In this document: positions 1,327-58,300 of the stretch, in pieces | Numbering within the stretch: the first letter of the stretch is position 1 | How the letters are laid out: every line of letters begins with the position of its first letter | Assembly: GCF_036971445.1 (NCBI RefSeq) | Contig: NC_091478.1 | Location: 88,536,001 to 88,600,000 of the forward strand | Direction of reading: 5' to 3' | Length of the DNA stretch: 64,000 nt | DNA from: Narcine bancroftii | Lineage: Eukaryota | The notes under the pieces: generated by a model | Databases searched by the model: none | What the model was told of the DNA's origin: nothing | What the model saw: only the letters and a program-made list of their open reading frames with translations | Translations under genes and position numbers: made by a program

Positions 1327-1668
1327 CCACCTTGGATGTGAAAGTCTTTCCAGCAGTGTTCAATGCCACAATTGGTGAAGAAGTCCTGCTAAATTGCTTA
1401 TTTTCTCAAACCATTGAGTTTGACTTGATGTACATTGTGATTGAATGGAACCAGAGAGCAGGAGATCATGAAAAGGCTATTTGTCTGTTGGACTTCGGGG
1501 AATATGAAAGCTACAGACCAGGATCAAGTCTCTTTCAAAATGAAATAAGCAAAGGAAATGCATCTTTACTCCTAAAAAATGTTACTGTGGATGACATTGG
1601 ATCATATTCCTGTATCGTTTCGCTATTTTCTGATAAAAATATGGGTAATGTTAATCTGTCAATTACAG
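1327..1668 (+). CDS. Exon: Ig V-set domain (B7/butyrophilin/tapasin-like)
   Basis: Acceptor ctgcag| at 1326 and donor G|gtgagt at 1669, phase 1-1. Motifs VLLNC, IEW and GNASLLLKNVTVDDIGSYSCIV. Four N-glycosylation sequons (NAT, NAS, NVT, NLS). Confidence 0.92.
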
Positions 1669-7600: not shown

Positions 7601-10600
7601 GCACCTCCTGTGGTTTCAATAAATACCGTAAATATTATTATGGAACCTGGAGAAGATAAAGTAATTATTTCTGTGATGCAAAACTTCTATCCGGAGAAAC
7701 TTTCTGTCTCTTGGTTAAAAAATAACTCAAAAGACAATGAAAGCCAAGTTAATATCACATCCCAAGCGGTTGCAGGAACACAACAACGAAATCAAGATGG
7801 GACATTTAACCTAATTTCATTCCTGATTATCAAAGGCAACAAAGGGGATGATGGAGTTTTTTATATCTGTCGAGTCACTCATGAAGCATTAAAAGTACCA
7901 ATACAAAAAGCTGTTGGGTTGACCATAAAGGGTGAGTTATAAAAGGGGAGAATGGTGTTGGTTTTTTCATGAGTCCCATTTATTTTCACTTTGGGAAATT
8001 TGATTTGAATTTTATGTAACTGAGCATAGACAGAGGGGGCATCATGAGAAGCAGACATCACTGAATCCCACGTACTTGAACAGAACTTTTAGCATTGTCG
8101 TGCCATGTTTCCCTTAAGATGAGAAGTCTTTGTAGTTTATTTGCGAAATGTTCACAAGATATTATAATAGAAAAGCTCTAATCTTTGACCTAATTTTATC
8201 AAAATTGTCTATGACAAGGCAGTGGTATCATATTTTCACTGCAAATATTAATACCATATCTGGATCACATGGTTTTTTAATTAATTCTGGTGTTCTTTTG
8301 TTAAAAAATACAATGAAACAATTATTTACTGTTATTACCTGACTGTTTTCAAAACTATGCTCAAAAATAATTAATATTTTGATTAATCAGATATCTGACA
8401 CAATGTAACCCCCATCAAGAACCAAGCTACATGCAGGATGTTAATGTAAAGTGGGCATGTTCTCCCCAGAGAAGGATGCATTTCGAGAAGAGTTGTCTTT
8501 CAAATGGGGGCATTAAATTGAGGTTTATGTTTCAAAAATCCCATGGCATAATTTTAAAGAAAATCTCAATGTCTCTTGGTGACTTGTTTATCCCTCTCTC
8601 AAAAGTTTCAAAAGTCCCAAAATTACTGCTCAATATCATGTTGCTGTTTGAAGTAGCTTGCTATGTTGAAAATTCTACATCTTCTGAATTAATTTTGAAG
8701 GTACAACATTGGCTGTAAAATGCTTTGAACTGTTCTAAAACAAGTGAATGTTCTAGAAAGTGAAAATTCTAGAAGTACGTTTCAAAAACTTCTGTGGGTT
8801 GTAGGTTAATTGGAGTATTTGGGCGGCTTGGGGGCTGGAAGGGCCTGTTACCATGCAATTTAAATTTTAAAAATTTAAATTTAAAAGATACCTTTCTGAT
8901 CTCCTGTCTGCACAATGTGAGGTACTGTCCCATTTCCTGGTGATGGTCCGGCAGAATTTACCCGCTTACCCCCACCCCGTTTTTTTTCGTCTGAACCAGC
9001 AAACTATTTTGGAGTGCAGGTCAGTGGGTCTCAACTTTCCTCAGTATCAGGCCCACCTGACTTGCGGCATAACATGCCATGGCCTGCTAGTGGCAATAAC
9101 TGAGCAATATTTTCATCAAAGGTAGGTCTGTAAATTTAAAATATTTTATTTAACATTTTTAAAGACCTACACAGAAACCCACTGGTTTAAAACCACTGAC
9201 TATGCAAAATTTATTAATTTAAGGGCTGGGAACACTTGAAGTGGCACAATAATCCTTCTACAATTCACTAGCTGTGTTTAGGATTGCTTAGATCTTCCTG
9301 AAGTCTCCTTGATCCTCACGGCATGAATCACAACAGCTGGGATTACTAGAGAAGGTGCCTCTGGAAGTAAAAATGCTAAGAATTGAACTTTGTAATGCAA
9401 GAATGCTGCCTCCAGCAGTAGTAGAGGGCTGTGGGTGTGAGGAAGGGAAAATTTATATTGTGGATTATATTGTAGGTTTACGTGAGTTGGAACAGCCTGT
9501 GCTGTTATGTTTTCTGTTTTACTCAAAGTCTGTTTCCTCAAAATTTACTAAACTTCAACTGTTCCTACACCATATTTCGAACATCTTCAGAAACATCAGC
9601 TGTTTATATAATATGCCTCTCTTTTGAAACATCCCATTGCACTTTACAACCAATCGTATGTTTGTTACATTGGAAGCAATGCTTCAAATTATGCTGTAAT
9701 TCAATTTTAAAATTTGCTTTTTGATTTCAAATGTTGTTCGGCTTACAGAAACTAATAATCTTGAATATTTTATTGACTTTTGTGTTTCTAGGCTCCACTC
9801 TAACTTCTAGATCAAGAATATTGTTCGCAGCTGTTGTGACCTTTCTGCTCACAGCAGTTATCTGCTATGGAACATGTGTTTTCTACAATCAAAGAACAGG
9901 TAAATAATAGAAGTCGTTAAACTTAATTTTGTGATGGGGTTGAGTTTTGTAAAGGTGCATTTCTTTCCCCGAGAAGTTAATAGTGTTCTGTCACTTTGAG
10001 CCATTTGCGGTCTCTATGGTGGTAATGTGATCCAATGGATGAGGTAGTCTACTTCAGCGATGTTGACCCTGTGACAGTGTTCCTTTGTAAAGACTTACTC
10101 ATCTCCCTGGTGTTTTGTTATAATGTTTTTATTTCTATGATATTCCGATACACATACTTTTCTAATTAGATTTGCATACCTAATGTATTTTAAGATGATG
10201 TCTCGTGCTTCGAGATCTTGACTGCTTTTCAGAAATTGACTTCAGTGGGATTGATTAAAAAGAAAAAGAATGCTGGAAATAATCAGCAGGTCAGGCCACG
10301 ATTTTTAGGAAGAAAATCTTTGGATCCTCAACTGGAATATTAGCCCTGTTTCTCTTTCTAAAGATGTGACTTGACCTGCTAAGTATTTCTCACATTTTCT
10401 GTTTTTATTTTAGATATCCAGCATCCACAATTTTTTTTTTAAATTTTCACCAAGATTGGTCATTGCCAACCAATCATATCGGAAGAGGAGCTTAAGTTAA
10501 AAATAAAGCAAGAGGATTAGTAAAATAAATGACAAATGATAGAGAAAATTATAATTGTAGCATTTTTTTGAAGTAATTCTGGTTTTTCTGTTTTACAGAT

Positions 10601-13600
10601 ACTCCCAGAGTGTCAAATATAATCATATCAAACTATTGGAATAAGGCCAATCCACTTTCTCTTACTTGTGCAGTTTTCTGGTTCAGACCAAAATCAATTG
10701 TCATCTCTTGGTCCAGAGGAGAAGTGGGTAAATTCCACAGGACCCTCATCAGTAAATGGGACAGCGCCTCACACTGTGCAGGCAAGAAAACAGAAAGTTA
10801 TTTTCAGAATGAACAGGGACAAGTTGAAAGAATGCCGTTCACGAGAGGAGAATATGATGTTGCAGTGTCTTTGAAAGATCACAAAGAATGTGGAATGCAC
10901 AGTTTAATATCTCAGCTCACATTCAGAGGTGAAAAAGTTGCAAAAAGAGAACAGGCTTATTATTTTGAAGTCTTGCATTATGCATTTGAGCAACCCATTT
11001 TAAAAACAGTTGTTGTAGAAATCAAAGGTAAGTTGCTTTTTTTTCCTATTGCATATAAATCTAAAGAAAATTAGAATTGTTTTAAACGATGCCAAAATAG
11101 GCATTGAAAAAGAAATAGAAACCTTTTGAGTATACACTGTGCCGTGCCATATATATCTTACAAATTATTGTGTGCAATCAATATTTAGCATTCGGTTGCT
11201 TAATTCATGTTAATCTTCTGTCAATTATTTTCTTTCCGCCTCTGACTCATTTACATACTTTGGGTAAATTAATGACCAAAGGAATAACAAACATAAAAAC
11301 AAAATTTGCTGAAAATATTCAAGAAATGAGGCAACATCTGTTTAATATTATAAATAATATTTTAGGTTCTATATTTGATCTTTATTCTCAGATAATCGAT
11401 TATAATTAGAGCTACTACACCACCTGTTTTCTGAATTGTACTGTTAACATTGTGGTAAACCACTGTCATGTATAATTATCTGGTCAGGCATACCTATTGG
11501 CCAGTTGTACCTGTAGCCCCTCTTCACAGACCCCTGTTACTCGGTACAGGACAACCGAACAGTAGGGATATGCTAAGTTCTCAAGTGAATAAAAGTCTAT
11601 TGGTTTTTCTACAGTAGTCTTCTGAGTAATTGATGGTGCATCAAACATTATGTAAATCCTGCACAAGAACATCCTGCTTCCCTCCCCTCTTCAAAGTTTC
11701 AATGTTCCCATTCGTTGATCATTTAAGAAATATTGTGTTTTTCTATGTGTACTATCACACTGGATAGCCTTACAAAATATTCCACTTATACATTTAACTG
11801 GTTTAATTGCAGAATCATAATATCTCACTCACAGATATCTTAATAATCAAGTGTATTATCACTTGGATACATTACACCAAATCCCATTATCTAAATAATT
11901 AATTATCAGTCATAAATACCTAAATCTTCAATACCAATCCTTGTAGAACCCACCAGAAAGAACTTGGATTGGATTAAATGGAAGTTGTATAGTTGTTCAG
12001 TATAACTTGATGAGAATAGTTGTGCAAAGTACTCTTGAGTGAATCATCTTATTGGAGAAAGAATCTCTAAAACAGGAAGGGCCTGTAACAGTGCTGTTTA
12101 TCTAAATAAATAACATTTTAAATAAAGGGTTAAAATTGTAAAGTAAATGTTCTCTGAAGCAACACACAACCCCTTGGGAGCCAACATTCAGCCAGCAGAG
12201 TCCCATGGTCATGCCCCACCCACAGCAGCTGTTTGAATAAAGTTGCGATAAAGTTGGATTTAAATAAAATGACGGCACCTCGGATGGAGAGCCGGCTGAT
12301 GCTGCTCGTCGCTGGGGTGGCTCTCCCAAAGTGTCTCCCTACCCCTGTCTCGTAAAGAATCTTTATTCATATTAGGTACATCTGGCTTTATCTGTAAACT
12401 TGGGGGAGTGCAGGTTAATTATGATGGTGGCATGGTTAGCTAGTGCTATGCTGTTACAGGGTCAGCGACTGGGGTTCAAATTTGAATTTTGTAAGTTAAG
12501 GGAATTACCTGATTAAAGTGAACTTTGCTTCATTAAAGATGATAATACTGACTTTTTTCCAAATTACTTTACATTTTGCACTGTCTTTTTGTCTTTTAAT
12601 CTGTGTATTCTTAATGCAAGTGTATTAGGCATTGGAACAGTGTATCTCAGTCAACCGGAAAATTCGCATATGCGGCATCCACGATCCCTGTACGTGCCGA
12701 ATAATGAGAATTCTACTGTATATGTTAACTTTATTTTTGATAAAATTTCTAACAGGTGATGATGACAGTATTGAATATTTTCCAACACAAGTAAAGCACA
12801 ATGATTGGGCAGTGCAGGCTATTGAAGAAGGACGGCGCACTGTGGTTAATTACATCAGTCCAAACATAGTTCCACTCTTAAATCTTTTAATGGAGCAGAG
12901 AATAATCTCCGAAGATGATCTCAGTGATGTAAAAGCTAAGCCAGACGTTGACAAAGGACGAACTCTTTTGGACATGATGAGTCACAAAGGAGAGCAGGCC
13001 AGTGCTCAATTTTTCAATGTACTACACGACACTGATTACCTTTATCCTGGCATCAGAAGATATATAACATCACTGATGGAACCCTACACTGAGAAAGGTG
13101 ATAGGCCAATTTTTGATCTACATGAAGACATACCAACTGTTTTATTTGAGTTTAATGATGAAAAAAACAGAATATCTAATATTTCTGAAGGTAAGTGTAA
13201 TTAGAATTAATGGGCATTTCTGTGTTTTAATAGTTCCATATCATTAGTATGTAAGCTCTGTAATATTCTACAATACATGCAAATACTGAAATTTGGATAT
13301 GGTTAATACCGTGGATTCAATTTGTTTATGTGGTTGAGGTGAGTATTTGCAGTTTTGAAATCTTCACATTCGGATGAGCAATTAAGCAGCACGAGGACAA
13401 CTTCTTCCCCTCTGCTGGGAGATTCCTGAATGAGCAATGAACCATAGACAGTCAGTTGCTTTTTTCTTTTTCTTGAACAATTTTTATTCATTTTGTCATG
13501 TGGTTCATATAAATATTTGCACTGTGATTTTCCTGGAAAACAATCCATTTTGTGACGTGTTCATGACCATTGATTCTGATTCTCATACGTTAAAACAAAA

Positions 13601-19600: not shown

Positions 19601-22600
19601 TGTGTTTCTTTAGGCTGTGCAATTCAATCTGAAATATAGTAAAACCCCTGTTATCCGAAATTCAAGCAATTAGCAAAAAAATTGCAGAAAGTAAATAGGT
19701 AAAAAATATGAAAGTTTAAAACTTTTTAACAATTGTGCAACATTCAATTTCAGGCAACCGGAAAATTCACTTATACAGCATCTACCAATTCTCCATAGGT
19801 GCCAAATACTAGGGATTGTACTGTAAAAAGGTTAAGTAGGTATTTCATACAAATTGTGTGATCTCTAATTTTATGTTCAGATTAGTGTCTGATGCACTAA
19901 TACCCAGCAATGCCCAATGTCATCCAACAGCGGGGAATGCATACTGGGTCACCTGCAATTTTGCCTCTGTATGCCACATGTTGGTTACGTGTGTAGAAAC
20001 AGATCATCATTGTGAGTCAATGTTGCATCAATGGAATTTGCCTGAATATATGGAAGCTGCCTTTAGTCATAGAGTCATAGCATCATACTTCAAAAAAAAG
20101 CAGGCCATTCAGCCCAACATCCATGTCAACCAGTGGTCACCCATCACCTAGCACTTAACCCATAGCTTTGTGTACCTAAGCAATTTAAGTACTCATCCAG
20201 ATGTTTCTTAAATGCTAGTAAAAACATAGAAATACTGGAGGAACTCAGCAGGCTCACAGCATCCATAGGAGGAAAAGATAGATCAGGAGTGACCAAACCA
20301 TGGCTCATGAGTCACATATAGCCCTTTGACATATAATGTGCAGCTCGCAAAGCTCCTGATGCCCCGACTGCGGACATGTTACACCCTAGTTCCCAAAGCC
20401 CTAGCCCCCTTCCCATCCGAGCTCCCAAAGCCCCAACTGTGGACACTCACCTAAGCCCTGGCTGCCCGCCCATCCAAGCTCCATGCAACCTGATTATGAA
20501 TTCTCACCTAGGCCCTGGCTGCTTGCCCATCTGAGCTCCCAACACCCTGACCACCTTCCCATCCAAGCTCCTGACACCCAAACCATGGAATCTCGCATAG
20601 GCCCTGGCCACCAGCCCAACCAAGTTCCCGATGCTCTGAATGACACAGGTACTTCCCGCGGTCAAAAGTAGTAGACACCCTAAATTTTACCCTAAAGATT
20701 GGTCCACAAATTCAGCAATTACATCCATATATATGGTATGTGTACTTTTTGATTATTGAAACTAATACAAATTAGCATTTTAAAAACTACATACATTAAT
20801 AAATATTATATACATGTATTTCTTAATATTTATATAAAATTTTTGTAACAAAATGTACATGTAGGAGTAAAACATATAATATTTTTTCATGCCTTACGGT
20901 TCTCAAACATCTGAAATATATTGTGGTTGTTGCGTTAAGCAACTTTGGCCACCGCTGTCTTAGATATAAAAATTTCTTAAATGCTCTCAGCCACGTAGCA
21001 TCAATCATTCTCTCAGTGCATTCTCAGTGCTTGCATCTCTCTAAGGCTGCTCTTGTATCCACTTAATTTCCTTCTGTACTCCAAATCCATATCCCCTAGT
21101 TTTATCTACCTCTGAAATAGGGGAAAAGTTCTTGCAGTCTGCCTTATCTTTACCCATTAGAATTCAGTGTACATCAATCATGTCCCTTCTTAACCTTGTC
21201 TGCTTTGGGGGGAAGAGACCTGTTTGCTTCAGTCTCTCCGCAAAACTGAACCGCTCTATCCCAGGAATTGAATCTCCACTGCACCCTCTTTGGCTCCATC
21301 ACATCCTTTGAGCACCGAACGTATCAGCACTCCCTCAGGCACATCTGACACATACATCCCCTTTCCCTGTCCTCACTGGTGTGAACACTGTCCCATTATC
21401 CCTCCACAGCTTTTCTGACACTCCAACCCCATTGCTTGTCCCCTGACCTGACAACCTGGTCCCAACCCAGTGACCTCTATCACAGCCATCCCATCCTGAT
21501 TACTGACACCCCAATACTCCAGCAGCCACCCATCCTTCAATCTTGTTCCTAAACTGCTCCTTTGGACCAGGCCTACCTCCTCCAAAAATATCATATCCAA
21601 GATGCATCCTCCCAATATTACCTTCATCGCTTCAACTTGAGTTTTTATTTGCATCCAAGATAAATATTTTTGATCTTTTTTTTTTTTAACTTCATAAGGA
21701 TTGGAATATTGATGCAAATTCTTCCTGTTAGAATTGAATAATGAACAAGAGGCAATAAATTATAATCTTTAAGCTATGGAAAACTATCTGCACACCATCA
21801 ATAGGATTATGAATTATAGATATACAGCACGGTAACAGGCCCTTTCAGCCCATGAACCCATGCCGCCCAATTACACCCAATTGGCCTACAACCTCCGGTA
21901 CATTTTGCAGGAAACCAGAGCCCCCAGGGAAAATCAGTGATTATAATTCAATCATCATTGATTGAAATGTATATTCATTGTTCACATTGGGCACCAAATG
22001 ATAATTATTGTTTCATTTGTATGGACAGTTTAGAGGGGAACATGCTGAAGGACGAAGGAGCAGAGTTGATTGCAAATGCACTGAAAATTGAGACGTGTAA
22101 AATAGAAACCTTGAGGTAAAACTTCCACGTGTTTTCCATATTTGTGTACATTTAGATTGATAAAGGATTGGGCTTTTATTTTTAAAAATTAGTACACTCG
22201 TAAAATTTAAAATGAACAAAGAATTTATAGTTGTATGAAACTAGAACATGAAAGGATGTGGAATAATGAATAAAAATAGGCTTAAAGTTTCACTGCTTAA
22301 ATGTAGCAAGTTATGAGTTCATTAGCTCCGAGCTATTGCCTCATAAACATGTTTTAAAATTCTTAACATAAACATGGAGATTGTGATCCTTTTAATTGTG
22401 AAAAATTATTGTTGTCATTTTATAGTATTGTGATTAATACTGTGACGTAATGAACATTGGGAGGTGTTACATTTGGTGATGTGAAACATAAAAATTGGTG
22501 GATAGAATCGTACAATTATACTGTATTGAAATGGGCCATTTAGCTCAATTAGTTCATTATCTCCAGAGGATGTGCATTGCCCAGCTCTTGTCCTAAAGCT

Positions 22601-25600: not shown

Positions 25601-27568
25601 TTCCTCACTGCCTGCTGCACCTGCACGCCCACTTTCAATGACTGATGCACAGCAAGACCCAAGTCTCGCTGCATCTCCCCTTTTCCTAAACAGATACCAT
25701 TTAATAGTTCTGCCAGTTCTCCCTACACCATCGCGCCACACCTACCAAAGATTGCCTAATGAGGAATATATCCAACCAAGTTGTCATTAAAGTGAAGGTG
25801 ATGATTCAGATGATGCACAATTGCATTTGGATATCATCGAAATCCAGATCTGTGTTGTAAATAATACAGCAACACAATCGCTGGAATCTTCTTTGCAGGT
25901 TGAAGCACAATTCCATCGGTGAGAAAGGGGCAGCACAAATTGCAGAAGCTTTGAAAACAAACAGCAGGCTGGAAGTACTGGGGTATGTATTAAACCAACT
26001 TGTCGACTTCTTTGGAGCTCTCCTAAATAGTGGCAAGTTCTATTTATAGGATACATTAAATATAGAAGGATGCTTCAAAAAGTTTCATGCAAGCATTAAC
26101 GAGCAAAAATTGAAATGGAACCACAAAAGGAGAAGTTAGGTCAAATTTTGATCAAAAAGGTGGATTTTAAGGAATATTTGTTTTTAAAGAAGGAAGAAGA
26201 GAGGTGATAAGGTTGAGGAAGGAAACCCTAGAGAGGAATTAAAGTACCACACCACAGAGGAGACGCTGGCAGCGAAATAGCATTGTGTAGTGAGCCACTG
26301 TTACAGAGGTAGAAATAAGCATTCTTAACAATTAATACACATTGGTGCAATGTATATTTATGTATTTTTTCATTTTGTTTTGACATGTGCAAGGGGTTGA
26401 TGGCAAAGAAAGAATTTGTGATGGAACTAAGATGAAGGTTTCAGCCTTTTCACTTTTTATTTTGAGAAACTTTCTGCTTATTCAATACTAGATGCCAAAC
26501 AAGGGACTTAGAAACTGTGATGTGCTCAAGAGTGCTGAGAAGGGGCTAGATGCCATCATTATAGATTTGGAAACAGATGCTTGATGTAGAAAACTGTTGC
26601 TTAAGGAATGCTTGTAGATGGGAAATAGAAGTGGCCAAGGACAGATTATTGGGAGACACCAGTTCGCAACGCAGGAGAGAGAAGCCATTGCTGGTGATGC
26701 TATAGAGACCATTGGAAAAGTAACATGAGAATCAGACAATGCAGGTCCCACCCAACAGTACAAAGATGAGGGTGTGGTATCAAAGGGCTGTAAAAGATGA
26801 GGAGGGAGAGGTTACCTTGATCACATTCACCTGCGATGCCAATACTAATTTTAAAAATTCAATCACATTGTTCTCTAAAATCTTTGAAGAAAGAAATGTG
26901 GGGCAAGACTAGAGGTAAATGACATTGCAGCTGCAGAAGTTGTATTACTGATATCTCCCTAATTTTATCTATGTCACCTTGCCTTCATTAGGTTGCGAGC
27001 AAATGTTGTCGAAGCCAAAGGTGCCAAGTTATTGGCTGAGGCCCTGGAAATCAATTCCACACTGAGAGTTCTTGGGTATGTTGCTCTTTTTCCCTTTTCC
27101 TGTTTACACGCGATAGTTTGCCAGATTACAGAAGTTCAGGGCAGCACTTTTATAACTTGTTTTAAAAACTCCATTGTTCCTAGATATTGGGCAACAAAAA
27201 TTTTCATTGTAGCTTGTGCTATCCATGTTAAAAAGTGTTTTCAGTTTTGTATTTTATTACGTGACCTAAATTAACTGAGATCAAAATGTAAGCTCGTGTA
27301 CTCATCTCTAATTAAAGTCACAATTCCATCATCAATCAATTAATAATAGAACTACCATATTTGACAGCATACAGGACCCCACCCTCTTTTTCCCAAAAGA
27401 ATCACCTCAAAAACCACCACTATATGCAAAGGTGACTTTTTGATGCCACTATTTTTCAAGAACCTGGCAGGAGGAAAGTGCTCAAACTACTCACCCGTGC
27501 TTTCCGGAGTTGCCATCGCTCTCTTCCCCTGGTAGGAAGGCTCACTCTCTCCCTCCTTCCCACCCGCC

Positions 27569-27602
<34 letters not shown>

Positions 27603-30600
27603 CTTCCTCCCTCTTGTCGCTCACTCTCTCCCACAGTGGTTTGAGGGGAGCACTTTGTTCAGCAAGCAGAGCTCCCTGAACAGATTGAATGAAGCACAGG
27701 GGTAGATGGCAATGAGCAAGCAGCTTGCTCGGGGGTCCCGTTGCTCGCTCCCTCTCTCCCTTGCTATCTCCCACAGTGCTTTGAGGAGAGTGCTGGGCCT
27801 CAATGATTAGGCTCATCAACAAAGCCTGATCATTGAGGTCCAGTGCTCCCCTCAAAGCACTGTAGGAGAGAGCGATTGATGAGAGGGAGGGAGCAAGCGA
27901 TGGAACCACTGAGCAAATTGAATGAGGTAAATACACTATGTGACAGATTATGTTGTGTTTGTATTGTATATAGATATTTTTTTGGAGATAAATTGGGGCA
28001 GGTTTCTTAGTGTAGGTCACATACAAACACTTCAAAACAGATCTCATTTAAAATACTGGAGTTCCGCTCAAGCCAGATAGGGCGGCTCCTGGGGGCCTTG
28101 CAAAAACTTTGGGGAGTGCCCAAGAGACTTCACTAATGAATTATTGTTTTGAAAAGCAACGGATGAAAGAGATGAGAGGAGTAGTTCAGAGCAGCAGTCT
28201 GCTTGGGAGTGCAGCTTGCTGTTCTAAGAGGCCATATGGTTTTGCAAGTAGAGTGAGAGAGAGAGATCGATCAGTTCTGCAGTTATTACAGTCAGCAGCA
28301 ACAGCTGGGACTGGAACAGGACAAGCTGGAAGGCTTGAGGAAAAACCCCATTTGGAAGACGGGTTGAGAATGTTTAGTTCAGCCTGGTCAAAGCCCTTGT
28401 GGTCCTTACAAGTGGAGAGGACTGGCTGCCTAATGTTTCACTTGAAATAAGGGAAACAAAAAGGAACTCTGTGGTGACCTGAAAGAAAGAGGTTATCATC
28501 TGGAAAACTCTGATGGAACAAGTTTCTTCGGCAAGACACTGATGTGGCTGATTAAAAGGGATCAGTTTGTGTCTAGGAACAACAAATCTCTCTCTGAAAA
28601 CCAACAAGAACCTTCCTGAGCGGTAACCATTTACCTTTCAAGCACCAAAGCCTGGTGAACTTTATAAATGTTAAATCCTGTGCACAGTATAAGAATTGCC
28701 TGCAACAAGTAAACTTGCAAGAATGAGAAGTGAGATTGGACTGTGAATCAATTAACTTCTCTAAACTTACACACACATTACATACATGTGCGCTTAAGGG
28801 GGTTAGTTAAGTTAATAGTGATAAGTTAAAGTGTGATTCTGTTTTCATGTTTAAAGATAATTAAAAGCAACTTTTGTTTAAGTATCCATTTGTCTTGGTG
28901 AATATCTATTGCTGCTGGGTTTTGGGTCCTGTGGGCTCATAACAACTAAAACAATTTTTTACTGAAATCTCACACTAAAAATGGGGGGTGAGGGCCGGCA
29001 GTGGGGTTCTTGTATGCTGTCAAATACAGTTGTGCCTTAGATTTGCTGAAATATATTATCTAAAAGTCCATAAATTGTGCAAGATCTCCATCATGTGCTC
29101 ATATCTTTGTATGGGACAGACCACCTGGCTGAGCATATTACTCTCATGGACTCTCCCTGCTAGGAGTTCCCTCTGGAAAATTCCAGAATATACAGCATTT
29201 TGATGGAAGTTGCTGAGCGGAACAGAGGCATACTAATCTTCATGAAGAGGAGAGTGGGTCAAATTGGTATCCTCATGGAAAACCATTTGACAAAAATTGA
29301 GGATGGTGTTTTCCAGGGCAAACCTTTGCCACGGGGAAACAGGCATAGGTACACCTAAGATCCATTGTTGCATGAATCATGATTGATGTCATTCTATTCA
29401 CAAGGCCCATGCAACAAGTTTCAAGGTGCAAATTTTGTCAGGATGAATCTGGAGGGAGTGATCATAGGTGAATGGAAGGAACTCTATGGCCATGAAACCA
29501 TTTCCTGTTGACTGTGCTTTTTAACATGGAAACGCCCAATGAAAGCTCACTGAATGGGTTCAGCTAAGAACACAGATCAATTTTGCTCAACAATTTGATT
29601 CCTCACAACCAATGCCTATACCTGATTCCATATAATTTATTTGACTTCTGAGAAAAACGCAATGATGTTTCTGCCTCTCTTTATCTTGAGCTATCTGGGG
29701 AATTTTTGTTTTAAAATGAACAATAATGTATTTTTATTCCTTTGGACTAACTCAGCCTACAATGTAACAAGATAGGCGACCAAGGCGCAATGTACATGGC
29801 ACAAGCAATTGAAAGAAATCGTAGTTTGGTTGAATTACGGTATGGATTAAATCTGAGATCTCACATTAAAACTTCTCCCAGCTTCCCCCTTGCATGCACA
29901 CTCACCTGCAATAATTTTTAAACTCTTAGTGCATTTTTGTTGATTTTTTTTTCCCTTTAATTAAGGGTTTGTGAGCTGTTCCATGTCTTTTTTATCCACT
30001 CTTCAACTGACAGTTCCCTTCTTTTTCAACAGTTGCTGCATGTCATGTATCCTCAGTAATAAACTCCCTGGAGTTTGCTTTCCATTTTCATGTTAAGTGC
30101 CATGTTTAATTCTCTTCCCATCTGATGGATGATCTTGTCTAATCTCTAATCCTCTTTGTTTTAGTTTAATTTATCTCTCTGCAATTTATTTGTGCTAATG
30201 TGGTAATGGCTTCTTTATACCTTTATTTTTCTTCTTGAGAGTACTCTTCCCCTTTCTCTAATCTCATTACATTATGATCAGAACTGATATCTGTCTGCTC
30301 TTTACCCTCTCCCTTTGTAACCTATCATTTTATTTCTCACTCCTTCTGTCTCCTTTCTCTTGACAGCCACAGCCTTTTAAAATTAGACATCAGTTTATCA
30401 TTGGTTTGGATCTTCTGTTGATAAGAGAACAGCCCATCTCAGCATGACCATTCTTCCAGCATATAGCCAGGAAGAATGTTACACTAGGAGGCTGGCTTCC
30501 TCACAGTGCACTTAGGGCCTCTCTGCTCATAAGTGGCCAAATCACTGTGAGGCTTGACCCTTTGCTCACTGGCAGTACAAGCTCTCATTGAAACTGGTTA

Positions 30601-33420
30601 TAATTTATCCAAAACACCTAAAAACTAAATAATAAAGATTATTATAAAACATTAAGATAGTTAAAAACATCACTCACACTTAAAAACAATTGAATATATT
30701 GAAATAAACTGAATTATATCAAATAATAATGTCAGCTTACCCAGTCATCTTTGCATGCTATGCATGCACCAGTTTAACTTGATGTGGGCTTAGTGATCAA
30801 TTTTCCCAATCCAAGGACTGGGAAACCTGAGGAAGCTCTCATTTCCTGATGGCTCCATGAGAACATGGCACTTGCTATAAGTTTCTATAAAGGCCTGCTT
30901 GCTCTTCCATGTTCCGCACCTTTGCCAGTTGAGAGCTTGAAAGTCAACAAGTCAAAAGCTCAAGCCATCTTTTAAGTGGAAGGTCTCCCCAGCCAAGTCA
31001 TGATTTAATTCACCACCTTTTTTTTTTAACCTGTTTCCATGTGGAAATGTCTTGTACAGTAGATTCACCTTTTCAAACTCGTTTCAGTTGTTCTTTTCCA
31101 TTGCTTTATTTTTAATTGAGTCAGTTGCAATTATAGGATCAATCCCACAACAGACTCAATTACGAAATCATTGCCTTGACCAACAAATCATAAAGGTATG
31201 ATTAATATTCCTGTGATTAAATAGTGGGGAGGAGGGCAGGTGAGATCTGGTCCTGATGTCCCACTCACCCAGAAAAAGTGTACATGTAATACATCACCTC
31301 TCCTTTCTCGGGGTCATGATCACTGTCTGGCTTGCCAGGCAGGTGGTCACTGCAAATGGCCTCTCCTACATTACGGCATCCGAGGCAATACCTTCTCATC
31401 GGTGTCCCCTGTTTTCACTGAGTTGCTGCTCCATGACACAATCGAATGTTCAGCAGTATAACTGGATGGGTCAGCTGGGCTCAGCCTTCATCAGCCAGCT
31501 TAAGAGAAGGAAAACTGATTTCAAACCCAGGCAGATGGGCCTCATTAGCCTCGTAGGCCATCCATCCAGGAGAAGGACACTCCAACGTAACACCTAAAAC
31601 CCGGGGACCTGCTGTTACTGTCCCAGCTTGCTAGGCCATGGCAGATAAATGCCAGGTGTTAAGAGTTGGGCCAGCACTGCACTCCACCTAAAAGATCCAT
31701 TGTGCAGGCTCAAAGGACATTTCCTAAATTTTCATTCACAAAGCCAAGCCATGAATTAAAATGTATCATAACAAAAACAAAGTGATGAACTATTCAGCAG
31801 GTCAGGGTACATCTTTGGAAGAGAAAGCGAGCTAAAGTTTCAGGTCGAACACCATTTCAGAACTCTTGGTTCTAACCAAGCATCTTTGTCCTGGAATATT
31901 GACCCACTTCTCTGCCCACAGATGAGTCCATCCTTATGAGTAGCTCTAGCATTTTCTGTTTTTTTTTTAAAAGATTTCCAACATCTGCAGTTGTTTCTTG
32001 ATTGTCAGTTAAACAGTTCAACTTTTTCAGTCAAGCACTGTTCTTTACATAGTCGCTCTTCCAGCAAGGTCCACATCCTAAAAAAATGAATAAATAAATA
32101 GTATAGTGTGCAGAAATATTTTATTTAATTTTTGCAATTCACATTTAACCTGTTATTTTATGGTACAAATAAACTGGATGTGTGCAGACTTGGAGGTAAT
32201 GAAATCACTGACAAGGGGAGTGATTACTTCAGAAGAGCTTTAGAAGTGAATAGTACGCTTGAAGAATTATGGTAAGAATTTTGTTTTAATCGTTCATATG
32301 TTTAAAGGGTTATTTTGGGGGGTTGAGGACTGTACACAGAGGGCTGCTATTTTATTGAACAAAGCAATCCATTAAGTAGCAGATTATATTATTAGGACAT
32401 CTGTTTGTTGTAATTGTGATCAAATAACTGAAAAAATTTCATTTCTGTTAATAATGAAATGTTCTGCAGTGTGTAGAGCAATATAAGTTGCTTCTTTAAA
32501 ATGCAATTGAATTGAAAAAGAAAATACTAAAACTATGGATGCTTTAATGTTTCTATATTTAAATTTTTTTTATTCATCAATATTTAAAGTTAAATTTAAG
32601 TTCAGCCACCAAAGGTATGCAATAGCACAGCCTGTATTTGAAAACATAACATGAGATATTAATCAAGAAGATGGACTCGGTTTATATATTTAAAAATCAT
32701 ATTTTAAATATCTGAAAAATAGATCAGTATTACAAAGAAAATATTTTTAGAGTCTACCACAATCTTTTTCACAATGAATTAAAGGAAATGTCACATTGTT
32801 TATGTGTGCTTGTTACATGCTGGCAGAAATTACTGTGAAGGCCTCCAAAGGAAACAAATAACATATGCTCATGGGAAGCAGAGGAACTGAAGCTGCTAAG
32901 ATCTCGAGCAGGCAATTAGAAGCTGAAAAACTCAGCGAGTCAGGGCAGCATCCACGGAGAGAAATTATCAATTAATTTTTTCGAATCAGATCCCTTTCTG
33001 GAGAGTCGCAAAAGAGGTCTTGAGAAAGGCTCCTTACCTAAGTGTTGACTGCTGGTTTCTCTCCAGGGATGCTGGCTGATCTGAGTCTCTCCAGCTTCTC
33101 ATTGTTTAGGCAACACGTGCTCAATTAAAGGAAGTTGGAGAAAAAGTTGGCTGCAATACATGGAGCCAACCTTTTCTGTTACTTTAGTTGATGAAAAATT
33201 GAACCGATTCCATTGTACATGAAAACTTCAGACATTTTTATTAGAAAATTACCCTTAAATGTACTGTTTGGGGATTTGCCACATCTAATATTGAATATAA
33301 ATTTTGTGTTCTTCTGATTTTTTTTAATATTTTAGGATTCTGGTAAATAACATTTCAAGTGGTGAAAAGAAAAGATTGACAAACGCCAGATATAAGAACC
33401 CAAATCTTCGATTGAATTAA
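1327..33420 (+). CDS. Spliced gene model (5'-partial, 12 exons): IgV-IgC1-TM-IgC1-like-CARD-NACHT-LRR, predicted membrane-anchored NOD-like receptor
   Basis: Exons 1327-1668, 7602-7931, 9792-9899, 10599-11027, 12756-13190, 17860-19585, 22029-22115, 25899-25982, 26992-27075, 29756-29839, 32188-32271 and 33336-33420 total 3878 nt. Adding 1 nt from an upstream phase-1 exon gives 1293 codons including the stop. All junctions are AG/GT, in frame and free of internal stops. Joining into one transcript is inferred. Confidence 0.75.
2880..3790 (+). mobile_element. Penelope-like element remnant (GIY-YIG region) with CT-rich tail
   Basis: Degenerate RVPL..SLRIQHI..LQCDPTTRHIFPS, then CYIC, and KQSFQVMQCFTCESA, matching the Penelope linker and endonuclease pattern. 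Boundaries are approximate. Confidence 0.65.
3800..7290 (+). mobile_element. CR1-clade LINE 5' part (ORF1 zinc finger and SGNH esterase, ORF2 AP endonuclease), interrupted by another CR1
   Basis: AVVIGDSIVR, DGLHLN, IGITET, YRRDR and VMGDFN motifs with frameshifts. The sequence stops at about 5845 and resumes at about 6870 (ADLIRDLEVGEP..NDHNMV). Confidence 0.88.
5843..6868 (-). mobile_element. CR1 LINE 3' fragment (RT C-terminus and 3' UTR) nested in the opposite orientation
   Basis: GVPQGSVLGPQLF, RPDLEYCVQFWSP, and the acatagaaacatagaa tail repeat. Confidence 0.92.
7602..7931 (+). CDS. Exon: Ig C1-set domain (extracellular)
   Basis: Acceptor ttgtag| and donor G|gtgagt, phase 1-1. Motifs APP, NFYPEKLSVSW, NQDGTFNLISFL and YICRVTHEAL. 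Three sequons. The B-strand Cys is replaced by Ser. Confidence 0.9.
9792..9899 (+). CDS. Exon: single transmembrane helix
   Basis: Not in the ORF track. Acceptor tttctag| and donor G|gtaaat, phase 1-1, 108 nt. Translates GSTLTSRSR-ILFAAVVTFLLTAVICYGTCVFY-NQRT, a 23-residue uncharged hydrophobic stretch. Confidence 0.85.
10599..11027 (+). CDS. Exon: atypical Ig C1-like domain, predicted cytoplasmic
   Basis: Acceptor ttttacag| and donor G|gtaagt, phase 1-1. Motifs PRVSNI, LSLTCAVFWFRPKSIVISW, GMHSLISQLTF and YYFEVLHYAF (F-strand Cys replaced by Phe). Confidence 0.85.
11964..12073 (+). repeat. 110-bp direct repeat, copy A (upstream of the CARD exon)
   Basis: ttggattggattaaatg...gagaaagaatctctaaaac; about 7 mismatches to 14076-14185 by eye. 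Confidence 0.9.
12756..13190 (+). CDS. Exon: CARD (death-fold) domain plus linker
   Basis: Acceptor ctaacag| and donor G|gtaagt, phase 1-1. CARD pattern in AIEEGRRTVVNYI..PLLNLLMEQRIISEDD..KGRTLLDMMSHKGEQASAQFFNVL. Confidence 0.88.
14076..14185 (+). repeat. 110-bp direct repeat, copy B (downstream of the CARD exon)
   Basis: Ungapped match to 11964-12073. Confidence 0.9.
14780..17650 (-). mobile_element. Decayed CR1 LINE ORF2 fragment, interrupted by an RTE
   Basis: Minus-strand remnants GLPQGSLLRPLLFTLYINDM, KAPHTRLLHKMRAYGI and EMAEEVNEYF. Boundaries are approximate. Confidence 0.75.
16454..17429 (+). mobile_element. RTE-clade (BovB-like) LINE, 5'-truncated, ORF end intact
   Basis: Open frame AHSEPALQ..FTYLGCTIS..QLRWMGHVSRM..CNRCNRVCLSRIGLVSHKRAC (terminal C2H2-like motif), stop at 17368, short 3' UTR and A-rich tail. 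Confidence 0.93.
17860..19585 (+). CDS. Exon: FISNA-like segment, NACHT NTPase, HD1, winged helix, HD2 and first LRRs
   Basis: Acceptor ttacag| and donor AG|gtattg, phase 1-2. Walker A GVAGIGKS (18126-18149), Walker B ILFLLDGLDEF (18339-18371), sensor-1 VLVTSRP, VEILGFS, LCYVPAFC and FFHLTHQEFFAALY. One large exon, as is typical of vertebrate NLRs. Confidence 0.97.
19635..19825. mobile_element. Tc1/pogo(Tigger)-like MITE
   Basis: Imperfect terminal inverted repeats tatagtaaaacccctgttat and atactagggattgtactgta, with TA ends. Confidence 0.55.
20345..20640 (+). repeat. Degenerate C-rich minisatellite (unit about 55 bp)
   Basis: Recurring ctcacctaggccctggctgc..cccatccaagctcc units. Confidence 0.6.
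22029..22115 (+). CDS. LRR exon 1 (RI-like, 87 nt)
   Basis: gacag| ... AG|gtaaaa, phase 2-2; SLEGNMLKDEGAELIANALKIETCKIETLR. Confidence 0.9.
23000..24960 (-). mobile_element. Internally deleted L1-clade LINE (ORF1 joined to the ORF2 C-terminus and 3' UTR)
   Basis: ORF1 motif LENQSRRNNVKIGDLPE (ORF 23918-24496). ORF2 end motifs HYNFLHQLYLTPEKL and KCLATTWK follow immediately, with the junction near 23790. Confidence 0.85.
24961..25700 (-). mobile_element. CR1 LINE 3' fragment
   Basis: QRDLG..LYRALLRPHLEYCMQFWS and the agaaacatagaa tail. Confidence 0.9.
25899..25982 (+). CDS. LRR exon 2 (84 nt)
   Basis: ttgcag| ... GG|gtatgt, phase 2-2; LKHNSIGEKGAAQIAEALKTNSRLEVLG. Confidence 0.92.
26992..27075 (+). 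CDS. LRR exon 3 (84 nt)
   Basis: cattag| ... GG|gtatgt, phase 2-2; LRANVVEAKGAKLLAEALEINSTLRVLG. Confidence 0.92.
27353..29030. mobile_element. Non-autonomous TIR DNA transposon (Tc1/pogo-like) carrying a solo LTR
   Basis: Terminal inverted repeats catatttgacagcatacaggacccc (about 27356-27380) and ggggttcttgtatgctgtcaaatacag (29003-29029). Confidence 0.7.
27951..28944 (+). mobile_element. Solo LTR related to the LTR of the Gmr1-like element at 33.7 kb
   Basis: TGTTGTG...CATAACA ends and near-TSD atta/acta. Shares agtgtaggtcac..acagatctcatttaaaat..gctcaagccaga with 33748-33823. Confidence 0.75.
29756..29839 (+). CDS. LRR exon 4 (84 nt)
   Basis: actcag| ... CG|gtatgg, phase 2-2; LQCNKIGDQGAMYMAQAIERNRSLVELR. 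Confidence 0.9.
32188..32271 (+). CDS. LRR exon 5 (84 nt)
   Basis: gtgcag| ... TG|gtaaga, phase 2-2; LGGNEITDKGSDYFRRALEVNSTLEELW. Confidence 0.9.
33336..33420 (+). CDS. Terminal coding exon (LRR cap)
   Basis: Polypyrimidine tract then ttttag|, phase 2. Reads WILVNNISSGEKKRLTNARYKNPNLRLN*, with TAA at 33418-33420. Resembles the short final exon of NOD1/NOD2/NLRC3-type genes. Confidence 0.82.
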
Positions 33421-57000: not shown

Positions 57001-58300
57001 CATAGATTTTAAAGGACCGTTACCTTCCAACAACAAAAATGTATATTTCCTTACTGTAATTGACGAATATTCCAGGTTTCCCTTTGCGATACCCTGCCCT
57101 GACATCTCATCAGCATCTGTCATTAAGTCACTTGAGAGAATTTTCAGCATTTTTGGTTTTCCCAGTTACATTCATACCGATAGGGGCTCAGCATTCATGA
57201 GCGCTGAACTGCGGCGAGCCCTGCTACGGAAGGGGATTGCCACCAGCTGTATTACCATACTCCGAGCTACAACCCGCAGGGCAATGGGCAGGTCGAAAGG
57301 GCTAATGCTACAGTCTGGAAGACTGTTAATCTTGCTTTAAAAACACATGGTTACCCTGTTACCCGGTGGCAGGAGGTGCTGCCTGAGGTGCTACATTCTA
57401 TTCGGTCATTATTGTGTACTGCAACAAATCAAACACCTCATGAATGTATGTTTGCCTTTCCTAGGAAATCAGGAACTGTGATGGACTGGCCAACCTGTTT
57501 ATCTGAGCCTGGTACCGTGTTGCTGAAGAGCCATGCTTGGGCGCGTAAAACAGACCCCCTAGTCCAACCAGTTCAGCTACTGCATACCAACCCCAACTAC
57601 GTTCATATTAAATTCCCAGACGGGAGTACTGACACTGTACCCCTAAGAGATCTGGCCTCGCCTGGTTCGCCCCTTCCTCACACCCCTACTCAGAGTGAGC
57701 CTGAGAGATTGGGCTCATCCCCCCAGCCTGTGACCCCTAGTAAGCTTTTAGATGGCCATGCTGAGGCTTCACTGCCTCACGCTGGCGATTCTGGAGCGGG
57801 TCCAGAAGTCAATCCTTTCCACACTACAGACCCAGGAACTGTATCAGTTCCCAAGGTTGCAAAGGAGCTGCCTGTTTTGAGAAGCACCAGAATTCGTAAA
57901 CAACCTAATAGGCTGACATATTCATAAAACATCTCATTATATTTCGATTGCTTGCTAGATACTGGCGTATTTTGGCTATTAGAGTATTCTCAATACCAAA
58001 CATCGTATCCATGTAACGCTTGCTTCAGTCTTTCCTAGCCACTGTTCTTTTGATTTTAACCCTTCTTCTGCCAGGGGGAGACTGTAGTGAATGTCTGTCA
58101 AGCTGCCTGTCTCCCTTCTGGCGAGCCTTGCTGTACTAACATTGGCTGTGCATTATCTCTACTGTTAAGGACGCTCCCTTTAGGTATAACTGCGTATGCA
58201 CCTATTGTCTTTCATTATTGTACCATGAGTTTCTGCTAATAAAAGCCATGATTATTGTTTGACCACATCGTCTTTGTCTACTTCATCAACTGGCACTTCA
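54014..58300 (+). mobile_element. Full-length Ty3/Gypsy LTR retrotransposon (gag, PR, RT, RNase H, IN) with frameshifts and stops
   Basis: 218-bp LTRs at 54014-54231 and 58083-58300, perfect 5-bp TSD GTGAC, PPT agggggagac. Motifs LIDSGST, VETDASD, LCHPG..CPVCAEC, IDFKGP and HTDRGSAF. Confidence 0.96.

What the first reader, a model, noticed from the sequence alone, without database searches (positions are those of the whole stretch)
1327..33420. Candidate cell-surface NOD-like receptor: IgV-IgC1-TM-IgC1-CARD-NACHT-LRR in one reading frame
Seen: 12 same-strand exons splice in frame with canonical sites. There is no stop-containing terminal exon after the Ig/TM exons, and no Met inside the CARD exon before the middle of the CARD. 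Known: vertebrate NLRs (NOD1, NOD2, NLRC3, NLRP) are soluble cytosolic sensors, while V-C1-TM proteins of the B7/butyrophilin/tapasin group have short or B30.2 tails. Inference: an Ig ectodomain is wired across the membrane to a complete CARD-NLR. Extracellular or luminal ligand binding could then drive NACHT oligomerisation and CARD signalling, or simply tether the NLR to a membrane. I am not aware of a characterised vertebrate receptor with this architecture.
Basis: partly seen in the sequence, partly recalled or inferred. Interest (0 to 1): 0.96.

Follow-up and report, generated by a model that had tools for sequence, protein, structure and literature searches.

The report
Membrane-anchored B7-H6–NLR fusion receptor gene
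This electric-ray gene really does encode one protein with a B7-H6-like antibody-type outer part, a membrane anchor and a complete CARD-NACHT-LRR danger sensor inside the cell. The layout is conserved in all sharks and rays examined but has not been characterised.

Summary
Confirmed. The 12 exons exist at the stated places, all with AG/GT sites and matching phases. They tile residues 23-1313 of the public model XP_069757798.1 of Narcine bancroftii exactly; the leader exon lies upstream of the window. Domains: IgV, IgC1, one TM helix, a disulfide-less Ig-like domain, CARD, an NLRP3-like NACHT with intact Walker motifs, and six LRR exons.

The same architecture is modelled in at least 19 shark and ray species. 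Two models come from a different, non-NCBI annotation. One is an author-deposited nurse-shark record named "B7H6" (1318 aa). Ray-versus-shark identity is 50-81% in every module, and the Ig half and NLR half give the same species-like tree. The post-membrane Ig domain has Phe in place of the second canonical Cys in all 12 aligned species, which fits a cytosolic position. No isoform is Ig-only or NLR-only.

Function is inferred. I found no paper describing this protein; the nearest analogue is a sea-cucumber Ig-TM-NACHT.

The scan had already noted this gene's 5' end (s1-877404) and a related B7-H6-like gene elsewhere in this genome (s1-877790), but not the NLR fusion.

The parts
1327..1668 (+). 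Exon E1: B7-type IgV domain (extracellular), phase 1-1. The leader/signal-peptide exon lies upstream of the window.
   Evidence: Pfam V-set 2e-9. Best PDB matches are B7-H3 2.5e-15, B7-H4, PD-L1 and B7-H6 3e-6. Equals residues 23-135 of P0284. Both canonical Cys and two N-glycosylation sequons are conserved.
7602..7931 (+). Exon E2: IgC1 domain (extracellular), phase 1-1.
   Evidence: Pfam C1-set 1e-11. The best non-antibody PDB match is human B7-H6, 1.2e-11 over the whole domain. Narcine alone has Ser for the first canonical Cys (codon 7670-7672).
9792..9899 (+). Exon E3: stalk, single transmembrane helix and a basic stop-transfer motif (YNQRT), phase 1-1.
   Evidence: It is the only segment with 19-residue Kyte-Doolittle hydropathy above 1.6 in the mature protein, and it scores 1.85-2.63 in all 12 species. 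It aligns with the TM and CV(F)YN(Q/K)R motif of turtle B7-H6. It is a helix (254-279) in the low-confidence AF2 model.
10599..11027 (+). Exon E4: cytosolic Ig-like (C1-derived) domain with a ~24-residue loop insertion and no canonical disulfide, phase 1-1.
   Evidence: Weak C1-set match (E 0.12). B and C strands align with antibody C domains. AF2 model pLDDT 68.9, pTM 0.68, all-beta. All top 500 Foldseek PDB matches are Ig domains. LxCAV, W and YxFxVxH are invariant, with Phe at the second Cys position in 12 of 12 species. 49% identical over 41 residues to a post-TM C1 domain of turtle B7-H6.
12756..13190 (+). Exon E5: CARD plus a ~50-residue linker, phase 1-1. It is skipped in annotated isoforms of two species.
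   Evidence: Pfam CARD 2e-9. PDB matches: ICEBERG 1e-5, NOD1 CARD 2e-3, caspase-1 CARD 0.04. Skipped exactly in Narcine X4 and Pristiophorus X2.
17860..19585 (+). Exon E6: FISNA-like lead-in, NACHT NTPase, winged-helix and helical domains, first LRR. Phase 1 in, phase 2 out.
   Evidence: Pfam NACHT 5e-37, NLRC4_HD2 2e-6, NOD2_WH 0.011, FISNA 0.098. Walker A GVAGIGKS, Walker B LFLLDGLDEF and TSRP are present. The best PDB match is NLRP3 at 7e-45; NOD2 scores 1.7e-28.
22029..22115 (+). Exon E7: one ribonuclease-inhibitor-type LRR (87 nt, phase 2-2).
25899..25982 (+). Exon E8: one LRR (84 nt, phase 2-2).
26992..27075 (+). Exon E9: one LRR (84 nt, phase 2-2).
29756..29839 (+). Exon E10: one LRR (84 nt, phase 2-2). 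It is skipped in Narcine isoform X3.
   Evidence: Pfam LRR_6 1e-12 on the public model.
32188..32271 (+). Exon E11: one LRR (84 nt, phase 2-2).
33336..33420 (+). Exon E12: C-terminal LRR cap and TAA stop (33418-33420).

Best explanation
The window holds one real gene of the lesser electric ray, Narcine bancroftii. It encodes a type I single-pass membrane protein. Outside the cell are a B7-H6-like IgV-IgC1 pair. Inside are a disulfide-less Ig-like spacer domain, a CARD, an NLRP3-like NACHT ATPase and six LRRs. It is a B7-H6/NLR fusion that arose by phase-1 exon shuffling before sharks and rays split, and it has been kept as a single-copy orthologue since.

Shown: the exons, the domains, the single TM, the conservation, and identity with public models.

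Inferred from the leader peptide plus one TM, and from the lost disulfide in E4: the topology.

Inferred mechanism, with my odds given that the gene is real:
(a) about 0.4, inside-out or dual sensing. The cytosolic LRR-NACHT senses a danger signal and oligomerises at the membrane. It signals through its CARD and at the same time clusters the B7-H6-type ectodomain for NKp30-type lymphocyte receptors. This is analogous to BTN3A1, whose cytosolic B30.2 domain senses phosphoantigen.
(b) about 0.3, outside-in. Engagement of the ectodomain drives NACHT and CARD assembly.
(c) about 0.2. The Ig-TM part is only a membrane tether.

The CARD-less splice form would act as a non-signalling regulator.
For: Exon anatomy and phases. 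Exact tiling of XP_069757798.1. The same V-set + C1-set + CARD + NACHT + LRR content appears in proteins of 1289-1346 aa from 13 species in the search and more in the cluster lists, with the N-terminal 425 aa 49-73% identical over 96-98% of its length. Non-NCBI models chiPu_0004173 and scyTo_0015947 and the author-deposited nurse-shark QTT61908.1 'B7H6' carry the full architecture. Ray-versus-shark identity: IgV .71, IgC1 .70, TM .50, E4 .54, CARD .63, NACHT .79, LRR .81. The Ig-half and NLR-half trees are congruent with each other and with the accepted species tree. E4 has an Ig fold with Phe at the second Cys position in all 12 aligned species. There is one conserved TM, and signal-peptide-like leaders are present in the orthologues. 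Turtle B7-H6 aligns colinearly through IgV, IgC1, TM and the start of the first post-TM C1 domain. The NACHT exon has no relative above 35% identity outside its own 50% cluster, which is led by this gene's public model. No isoform is Ig-only or NLR-only, and CARD skipping is annotated in two species. For the inside-out reading: the LRR and NACHT are the most conserved parts; B7-H6 is known as a ligand displayed to NK cells; BTN3A1 is a precedent (PMC10533412).
Against: I saw no RNA reads across 9899/10599, 11027/12756 or 13190/17860. Most supporting models come from one pipeline (NCBI Gnomon), which can carry a fusion from species to species through protein homology. I could not check whether QTT61908.1 derives from cDNA. 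Reading through the E3 or E4 donors gives early stops, so shorter Ig-only products are not excluded. Narcine has lost the first Cys of its C1 domain and has a long branch in the Ig half (0.34 against 0.04 in Pristis), which may mean its ectodomain is under relaxed constraint. The direction of signalling, the ligand and the CARD partner are all inference. The full-length AF2 model is uninformative (pLDDT 42.6).
Confidence: 0.85

Rival explanations
1. There are two neighbouring genes: a B7-H6-like gene (IgV-IgC1-TM-Ig) that ends by read-through or polyadenylation after E3 or E4, and a separate CARD-NACHT-LRR gene with an unrecognised 5' exon in intron 4. Annotation pipelines and the first reader joined them because all the exons are phase 1.
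For: Phase 1-1 is the norm for Ig exons, so in-frame joining is expected by chance at the one true fusion junction about 1 time in 3. Read-through of the E3 and E4 donors meets stops after 2 and 14 codons, and AATAAA/ATTAAA hexamers occur in both introns. No read-level evidence was obtained.
Against: The arrangement, the phases and the open frame are kept in at least 19 species, including models from a different, non-NCBI annotation and an author-deposited sequence. E5 has no Met before the middle of the CARD. Intron 4 has no CpG-rich stretch (GC 28-39%). No NLR-only or Ig-only isoform or protein was found in the 316-1004 aa range or among the cluster members. Isoforms that join E4 directly to E6 are annotated in two species. 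Hexamer density in the introns is near the AT-rich background.
Confidence: 0.07
2. The fusion gene is real in elasmobranchs, but the Narcine copy is decaying, or its ectodomain has lost its original binding function.
For: Narcine alone has Ser for the first canonical Cys of the C1 domain (IISVM against IICEM). It has the longest terminal branches: 0.34 in the Ig half and 0.16 in the NLR half, against medians of 0.094 and 0.052. Isoform X2 has a leader that does not look like a signal peptide.
Against: All 12 exons are open with intact splice sites. The Walker A and B motifs, the CARD and the LRRs are intact. The NLR half is still 76-83% identical to the orthologues. NCBI annotates four isoforms for this gene.
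Confidence: 0.08
3. This is a pure outside-in receptor. Ligand binding to the Ig ectodomain clusters the tails and drives NACHT oligomerisation and CARD signalling. The LRRs serve only for auto-inhibition.
For: This is the general logic of single-pass immune receptors. The CARD resembles the caspase-1/ICEBERG and NOD1 CARDs. The ectodomain is 70% conserved over the shark-ray split, which suggests a fixed partner.
Against: The LRR and NACHT are the most conserved modules, which would not be needed for a mere oligomerisation scaffold. In mammals B7-H6 is a displayed ligand rather than a receptor (my own knowledge). Nothing was tested here.
Confidence: 0.3

Closest known systems
B7-H6 / NCR3LG1 (ligand of the NK receptor NKp30)
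   Same: IgV-IgC1 ectodomain plus a single TM. The C1 domain's best non-antibody PDB match is human B7-H6. The best non-NLR relatives of the N-terminal 425 aa are turtle NCR3LG1, which aligns colinearly through the TM and into the start of a post-TM C1 domain. The nurse-shark orthologue is deposited under this name.
   Different: Human B7-H6 has a short tail of signalling motifs (my own knowledge). Here the tail is Ig-like + CARD + NACHT + LRR, more than 1000 residues. The V domain alone scores higher with B7-H3. Binding to NKp30 is untested.
NLRP3 and the elasmobranch/amphibian 'NLRP3-like' NLRs
   Same: The NACHT with a FISNA-like lead-in, WH/HD domains and intact Walker motifs. NLRP3 is the best PDB match at 7e-45.
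   Different: Only 31-35% identity to any other NLR. It has a CARD rather than a PYD. Its LRRs are single-repeat 84-nt exons. It is membrane-anchored with an ectodomain. The NCBI names NLRC3-like and NOD1-like are not supported as orthology.
Butyrophilin BTN3A1 (B7-related V-C ectodomain with a cytosolic B30.2 sensor)
   Same: A B7-superfamily ectodomain is joined across the membrane to a cytosolic ligand-sensing domain. This is an 'inside-out' precedent (PMC10533412).
   Different: The sensor here is a NACHT-LRR with a CARD, not B30.2/SPRY; Pfam finds no SPRY match. The resemblance is of working principle only.
Sea-cucumber membrane NLRs AjNLRC4 and AjNLR-new (Ig + TM + NACHT)
   Same: These are the only described NLRs with an Ig domain, a TM and a NACHT in one chain. 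AjNLRC4 is reported with the Ig outside and the NACHT inside (PMC8699970, PMC13133943).
   Different: They are echinoderm proteins. AjNLRC4 lacks a CARD by its authors' description. They act through cytoskeleton-driven phagocytosis. Homology with this gene was not tested, and an independent origin is likely.
NOD1 / NOD2
   Same: CARD-NACHT-LRR order, 84-nt LRR exons, and action at membranes (recruited there by lipidation; my own knowledge).
   Different: They are soluble proteins. Here the anchor is a genetically encoded TM plus ectodomain. The NACHT is closer to NLRP3 than to NOD2.

Membership tests
NLR (NOD-like receptor) family | Central NACHT NTPase with Walker A and Walker B motifs | tested here: met
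   Pfam NACHT 5e-37. GVAGIGKS and LFLLDGLDEF are present in the translation.
NLR (NOD-like receptor) family | C-terminal leucine-rich repeats | tested here: met
   Six LRR exons of 84-87 nt. Pfam LRR_6 1e-12 on the public model.
NLR (NOD-like receptor) family | Death-fold effector domain N-terminal to the NACHT | tested here: met
   Pfam CARD 2e-9. ICEBERG and NOD1 CARDs match in the PDB.
NLR (NOD-like receptor) family | Soluble cytosolic protein with no signal peptide or TM (true of all characterised vertebrate NLRs) | tested here: not met
   Leader peptide plus one conserved TM helix upstream of the CARD.
NLRC3 or NOD1 orthologue (the names in NCBI annotation) | Orthologue-level similarity of the NACHT-LRR to NLRC3 or NOD1 | tested here: not met
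   The best relatives of 316-1004 aa are 'NLRP3-like' at 31-33% identity. The best PDB match is NLRP3, with NOD2 weaker. NOD1 matches only in the CARD, at 2e-3.
B7-H6 / NCR3LG1 | IgV-IgC1 ectodomain followed by a TM | tested here: met
B7-H6 / NCR3LG1 | Closest non-self relatives are NCR3LG1 | tested here: met
   Turtle NCR3LG1 scores 8e-33 and 1e-31, with colinear alignment. Caveat: the V domain alone scores best with B7-H3.
B7-H6 / NCR3LG1 | Binds NKp30 (NCR3) | not testable with these tools
Butyrophilin | Cytosolic B30.2/SPRY domain | tested here: not met
   Pfam finds no SPRY/B30.2 match on the full public models.
Echinoderm Ig-TM-NACHT receptors (AjNLRC4 type) | Sequence homology beyond the shared domain types | not tested
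Only the papers were read.

The most novel reading that the evidence does not exclude
The ancestral gnathostome B7-H6 was not a passive stress ligand. It was the outer face of a membrane NLR. Cytosolic danger sensing by its NACHT-LRR directly clusters or exposes the NKp30 ligand on the same molecule and fires CARD signalling at the same time. One protein thereby links cell-intrinsic innate sensing to lymphocyte recognition. Bony vertebrates later lost the NLR tail and replaced this hard-wired link with transcriptional induction of B7-H6.
Probability: 0.2. Interest if true: 0.95.

Novelty: new variant of a known kind. Interest (0 to 1): 0.78.

Why it matters
Every characterised vertebrate NLR is a soluble cytosolic sensor. 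Here a complete CARD-NACHT-LRR is permanently wired to a B7-H6-type ectodomain through a membrane helix, and the arrangement has been kept since before sharks and rays diverged.

If the protein works as one unit, it physically joins two branches of immunity that are treated separately: inflammasome/NOD-type sensing, and NK/T-cell ligand display.

It gives a natural test case for whether induced proximity at a membrane can switch on a NACHT, or whether a NACHT can drive inside-out signalling as butyrophilins do. It would also revise the evolutionary history of B7-H6 and NKp30.

On the practical side, the current database names (NLRC3-like, NOD1-like, and in one case PLEKHF1) hide the gene from both research fields.

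Tried and rejected
1. Read evidence. The look-up of sequencing runs on 9700-19699 gave four runs from one study, holding 37-45% of the sampled words.

3. A search for short transcript-derived fragments containing E4 (78-248 aa) was blank. Given the length window, this says little.

4. The full-length AF2 model of the CARD-less isoform was poor (pLDDT 42.6). I used it only for the TM helix.

5. Flajnik 2012, Ohta 2015 and Kinlein 2021 are not held, so I could not check whether the nurse-shark record has been described in print.

6. Rfam found no RNA family in the window.

7. Poly(A) hexamers and CpG content of introns 3 and 4 were uninformative.

Each exon was searched by reference. The joined proteins I used are public models that the tools returned (P0121, P0267, P0284).

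9. I rejected NOD1 or NLRC3 orthology and butyrophilin membership.

Full report
**Observation.**

All three acceptors and all three donors it named are AG and GT. I located the remaining boundaries from three-frame translations and a scan for AG...GT intervals.

Exons and phases:
- E1 1327-1668, E2 7602-7931, E3 9792-9899, E4 10599-11027 and E5 12756-13190 are all phase 1 on both sides.
- E6 17860-19585 goes from phase 1 to phase 2.
- E7 22029-22115, E8 25899-25982, E9 26992-27075, E10 29756-29839 and E11 32188-32271 are single-repeat LRR exons in phase 2.
- E12 33336-33420 ends in TAA.

Pfam, exon by exon:
- V-set 2e-9
- C1-set 1e-11
- nothing for the 35-residue E3
- a weak C1-set match for E4 (E 0.12)
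- CARD 2e-9
- NACHT 5e-37, with NLRC4_HD2, NOD2_WH and a faint FISNA match

I searched the spliced model exon by exon, by reference, and did not join the exons for any search.

**Identity of the gene.**

A search of 1.84 billion cluster representatives with the NACHT exon, which has no length limit, returned a 100% match at residues 426-999 of a 1168-aa protein. That protein is XP_069757801.1, "NLR family CARD domain-containing protein 3-like isoform X4" of Narcine bancroftii, the lesser electric ray. It consists of leader + E1-E4 + E6-E12 and skips the CARD exon.

Isoform X1 (XP_069757798.1, 1313 aa) contains everything. The whole-codon translation of each window exon tiles its residues 23-1313, one split codon apart. 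An earlier scan note (s1-877404) had seen that 5' end as a B7/butyrophilin-like gene next to POP4.

**Is the fusion real, or an artefact of phase-1 exons?**

In-frame joining alone is weak evidence. Ig exons are phase 1-1 by default, and reading through the E3 or E4 donors meets stops after 2 and 14 codons. The comparative evidence is much stronger.

- *Same architecture in many species.* Searching with the N-terminal 425 residues found proteins of 1289-1346 aa with V-set, C1-set, CARD, NACHT and LRR Pfam content. They cover 96-98% of the query at 49-73% identity. The rays are Pristis, Mobula and Hemitrygon. The sharks are Pristiophorus, Heptranchias, Heterodontus, Carcharodon, Chiloscyllium, Scyliorhinus, Mustelus and Rhincodon. 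Cluster lists add Hypanus, Mobula birostris, Cetorhinus, Scyliorhinus torazame, Chiloscyllium punctatum and Ginglymostoma.
- *Models from outside NCBI's pipeline.* Two models are GenBank GCC/GCB "hypothetical protein" records (chiPu_0004173, 1352 aa; scyTo_0015947, 1190 aa) and are colinear with the NCBI models. I attribute them to the 2018 shark genome projects from memory; I did not check their provenance.
[quoted passage not shown] It is 1318 aa and carries the whole Ig-TM-Ig-CARD-NACHT-LRR chain.
- *No close relative of the NLR half elsewhere.* In the 316-1004 aa range the NACHT exon has no relative above 33% identity. Among cluster representatives it has none above 35% outside its own cluster. 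So no NLR-only orthologue exists in these collections.
- *No isoform separates the halves.* No annotated isoform is Ig-only or NLR-only. The variants are exact CARD-exon skips (Narcine X4, Pristiophorus X2), single-LRR skips, and N-terminal truncations.

**Conservation.**

In a 12-species alignment, ray-versus-shark identity is IgV 0.71, IgC1 0.70, TM exon 0.50, E4 0.54, CARD 0.63, NACHT 0.79 and LRR 0.81. Maximum-likelihood trees of the Ig half and of the NLR half each recover rays against sharks at 100/100. Their internal order is the same and matches the accepted phylogeny. The Ig half evolves about twice as fast. This is the pattern of one single-copy gene inherited as a unit since before the shark-ray split.

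**Topology.**

The orthologues begin with typical signal-peptide-like leaders, for example MNCFLV...ILSSVA|TLDV. The mature protein has exactly one segment of TM-grade hydrophobicity. It lies in E3, is conserved as hydrophobic in all 12 species, and is followed by basic residues.

E4 follows the TM and is the informative part.
- Its B and C strands align with antibody constant domains.
- An AF2 model built on the orthologue alignment is all-beta (pLDDT 68.9, pTM 0.68) with a disordered 24-residue loop.
- All top 500 Foldseek PDB matches are Ig domains.
- LxCAV, the core Trp and YxFxVxH are invariant. The second canonical Cys position is Phe in all 12 aligned species.

An Ig domain that lost its disulfide in the common ancestor and has kept the fold signature since is what one expects on the reducing, cytosolic side. 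This ties E4 to the TM upstream. Because E4 has no stop, it also ties E4 to the NLR exons downstream.

**Origin of the halves.**

The V domain is B7-type. Its PDB matches are B7-H3 2.5e-15, B7-H4, PD-L1 and B7-H6 3e-6. The best non-antibody match of the C1 domain is human B7-H6 at 1.2e-11.

The best non-NLR relatives of the whole N-terminal part are turtle NCR3LG1/B7-H6 models. One of them aligns colinearly through IgV, IgC1, the TM (CV(F)YN(Q/K)R) and into the start of its first post-TM C1 domain. Another of its post-TM C1 domains is 49% identical to the start of E4. A second scan note (s1-877790) reports a B7-H6-like gene with post-TM C1 domains elsewhere in this genome. I did not examine it.

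The NACHT is NLRP3-like (7e-45; NOD2 1.7e-28), with intact Walker A, Walker B and sensor motifs. The CARD is nearest to ICEBERG/caspase-1 and to NOD1. The simplest history is a phase-1 exon-shuffling fusion of a V-C1-TM-C1 B7-H6-like gene with a CARD-NLR.

**Mechanism (inferred).**

I hold the structural statement at about 0.85-0.9. For function I weigh three models.

- *Inside-out or dual sensing, about 0.4.* The most conserved parts are the LRR and NACHT, that is, a complete cytosolic sensor. B7-H6 is known as a ligand shown to NK cells. BTN3A1 shows that a B7-related ectodomain can report what a cytosolic domain senses (PMC10533412). NACHT oligomerisation at the membrane would fire the CARD and cluster the ectodomain together.
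- *Tether only, about 0.2.*

The in-frame CARD-less isoform, annotated in a ray and a shark, would give a non-signalling competitor.

**Known or new?**

Nine searches of the held literature found no description of a vertebrate NLR with an ectodomain and TM, and no paper holding both B7H6 and NLRC3. The whale-shark NLR survey does not mention it.

The only described Ig-TM-NACHT receptors are from a sea cucumber (PMC8699970, PMC13133943). The three papers most likely to discuss shark B7H6 are not held. The depositor's name for QTT61908.1 shows that at least one laboratory knows the sequence.

I therefore rate the finding as a new variant of a known kind. It is real, conserved, already in databases under misleading names, and functionally uncharacterised as far as I could see.

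**Limits.**

- The full-length AF2 model was poor.
- Absence from chimaeras and bony vertebrates rests only on blank protein searches.

Noticed in passing
window 7670-7672 (within E2): Narcine alone has Ser where all 11 other species have the first canonical Cys of the IgC1 domain (IISVM against IICEM). This leaves the second Cys unpaired. Narcine also has by far the longest branch in the Ig half (0.34 against 0.04 in Pristis).
   Followed up: partly
P0280 (turtle NCR3LG1 model, 967 aa), residues ~265-967: Turtle B7-H6 models carry a TM-like segment followed by five more C1-set domains. At least some of these keep their canonical cysteines, and no second TM follows. A disulfide-bonded Ig array on the cytosolic side is odd. 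The cause may be alternative TM-exon use or a model error.
   Followed up: no
P0300 (Mustelus asterias isoform X1), after residue 275: There is a 34-residue insertion right after the TM that repeats the start of the E4 domain (KVAPKVTDIVKSNHLHMDDPLSLVCAV...). It is a partial exon duplication or an alternative donor. Mustelus isoform X5 instead lacks the IgC1 and TM exons.
   Followed up: no
P0291 (Cetorhinus maximus, 1317 aa): The basking-shark orthologue is named 'pleckstrin homology domain-containing family F member 1 isoform X1'. This suggests a read-through model with a neighbouring PLEKHF1 gene. With the POP4 note upstream, it hints at a POP4 / B7H6-NLR / PLEKHF1 gene order. No PLEKHF1 exon was seen in window 33.4-64 kb.
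   Followed up: partly
window 4848-5857 (+), 6059-6910 (-), 15671-17368, 25318-25674 (-): The introns hold non-LTR retrotransposon debris: a GDSL-esterase-type ORF (3e-7), reverse-transcriptase fragments (2e-8), and a 338-aa ORF at 16352-17368 with no Pfam match that looks like an RT C-terminal piece.
   Followed up: partly
window 34809-39000 and 54735-57927 (+); 48035-48532 (+): Two LTR-retrotransposon-like gag-pol stretches lie downstream of the gene (SCAN-like capsid 2.5e-8; RT plus RNase H 4e-26). There is also a Harbinger-type DDE transposase fragment (3e-13).
   Followed up: partly
The tool's own message says the filter also trips by chance. I did not examine it further or send it to any search tool.
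   Followed up: no
window 9700-19699, runs X1-X4: Four small runs (112-330 million letters, one study) hold 37-45% of the sampled words of a stretch that is only 27% exon. They are labelled 'RNA? (a guess)'. Whether they are unspliced RNA or DNA could not be settled.
   Followed up: no
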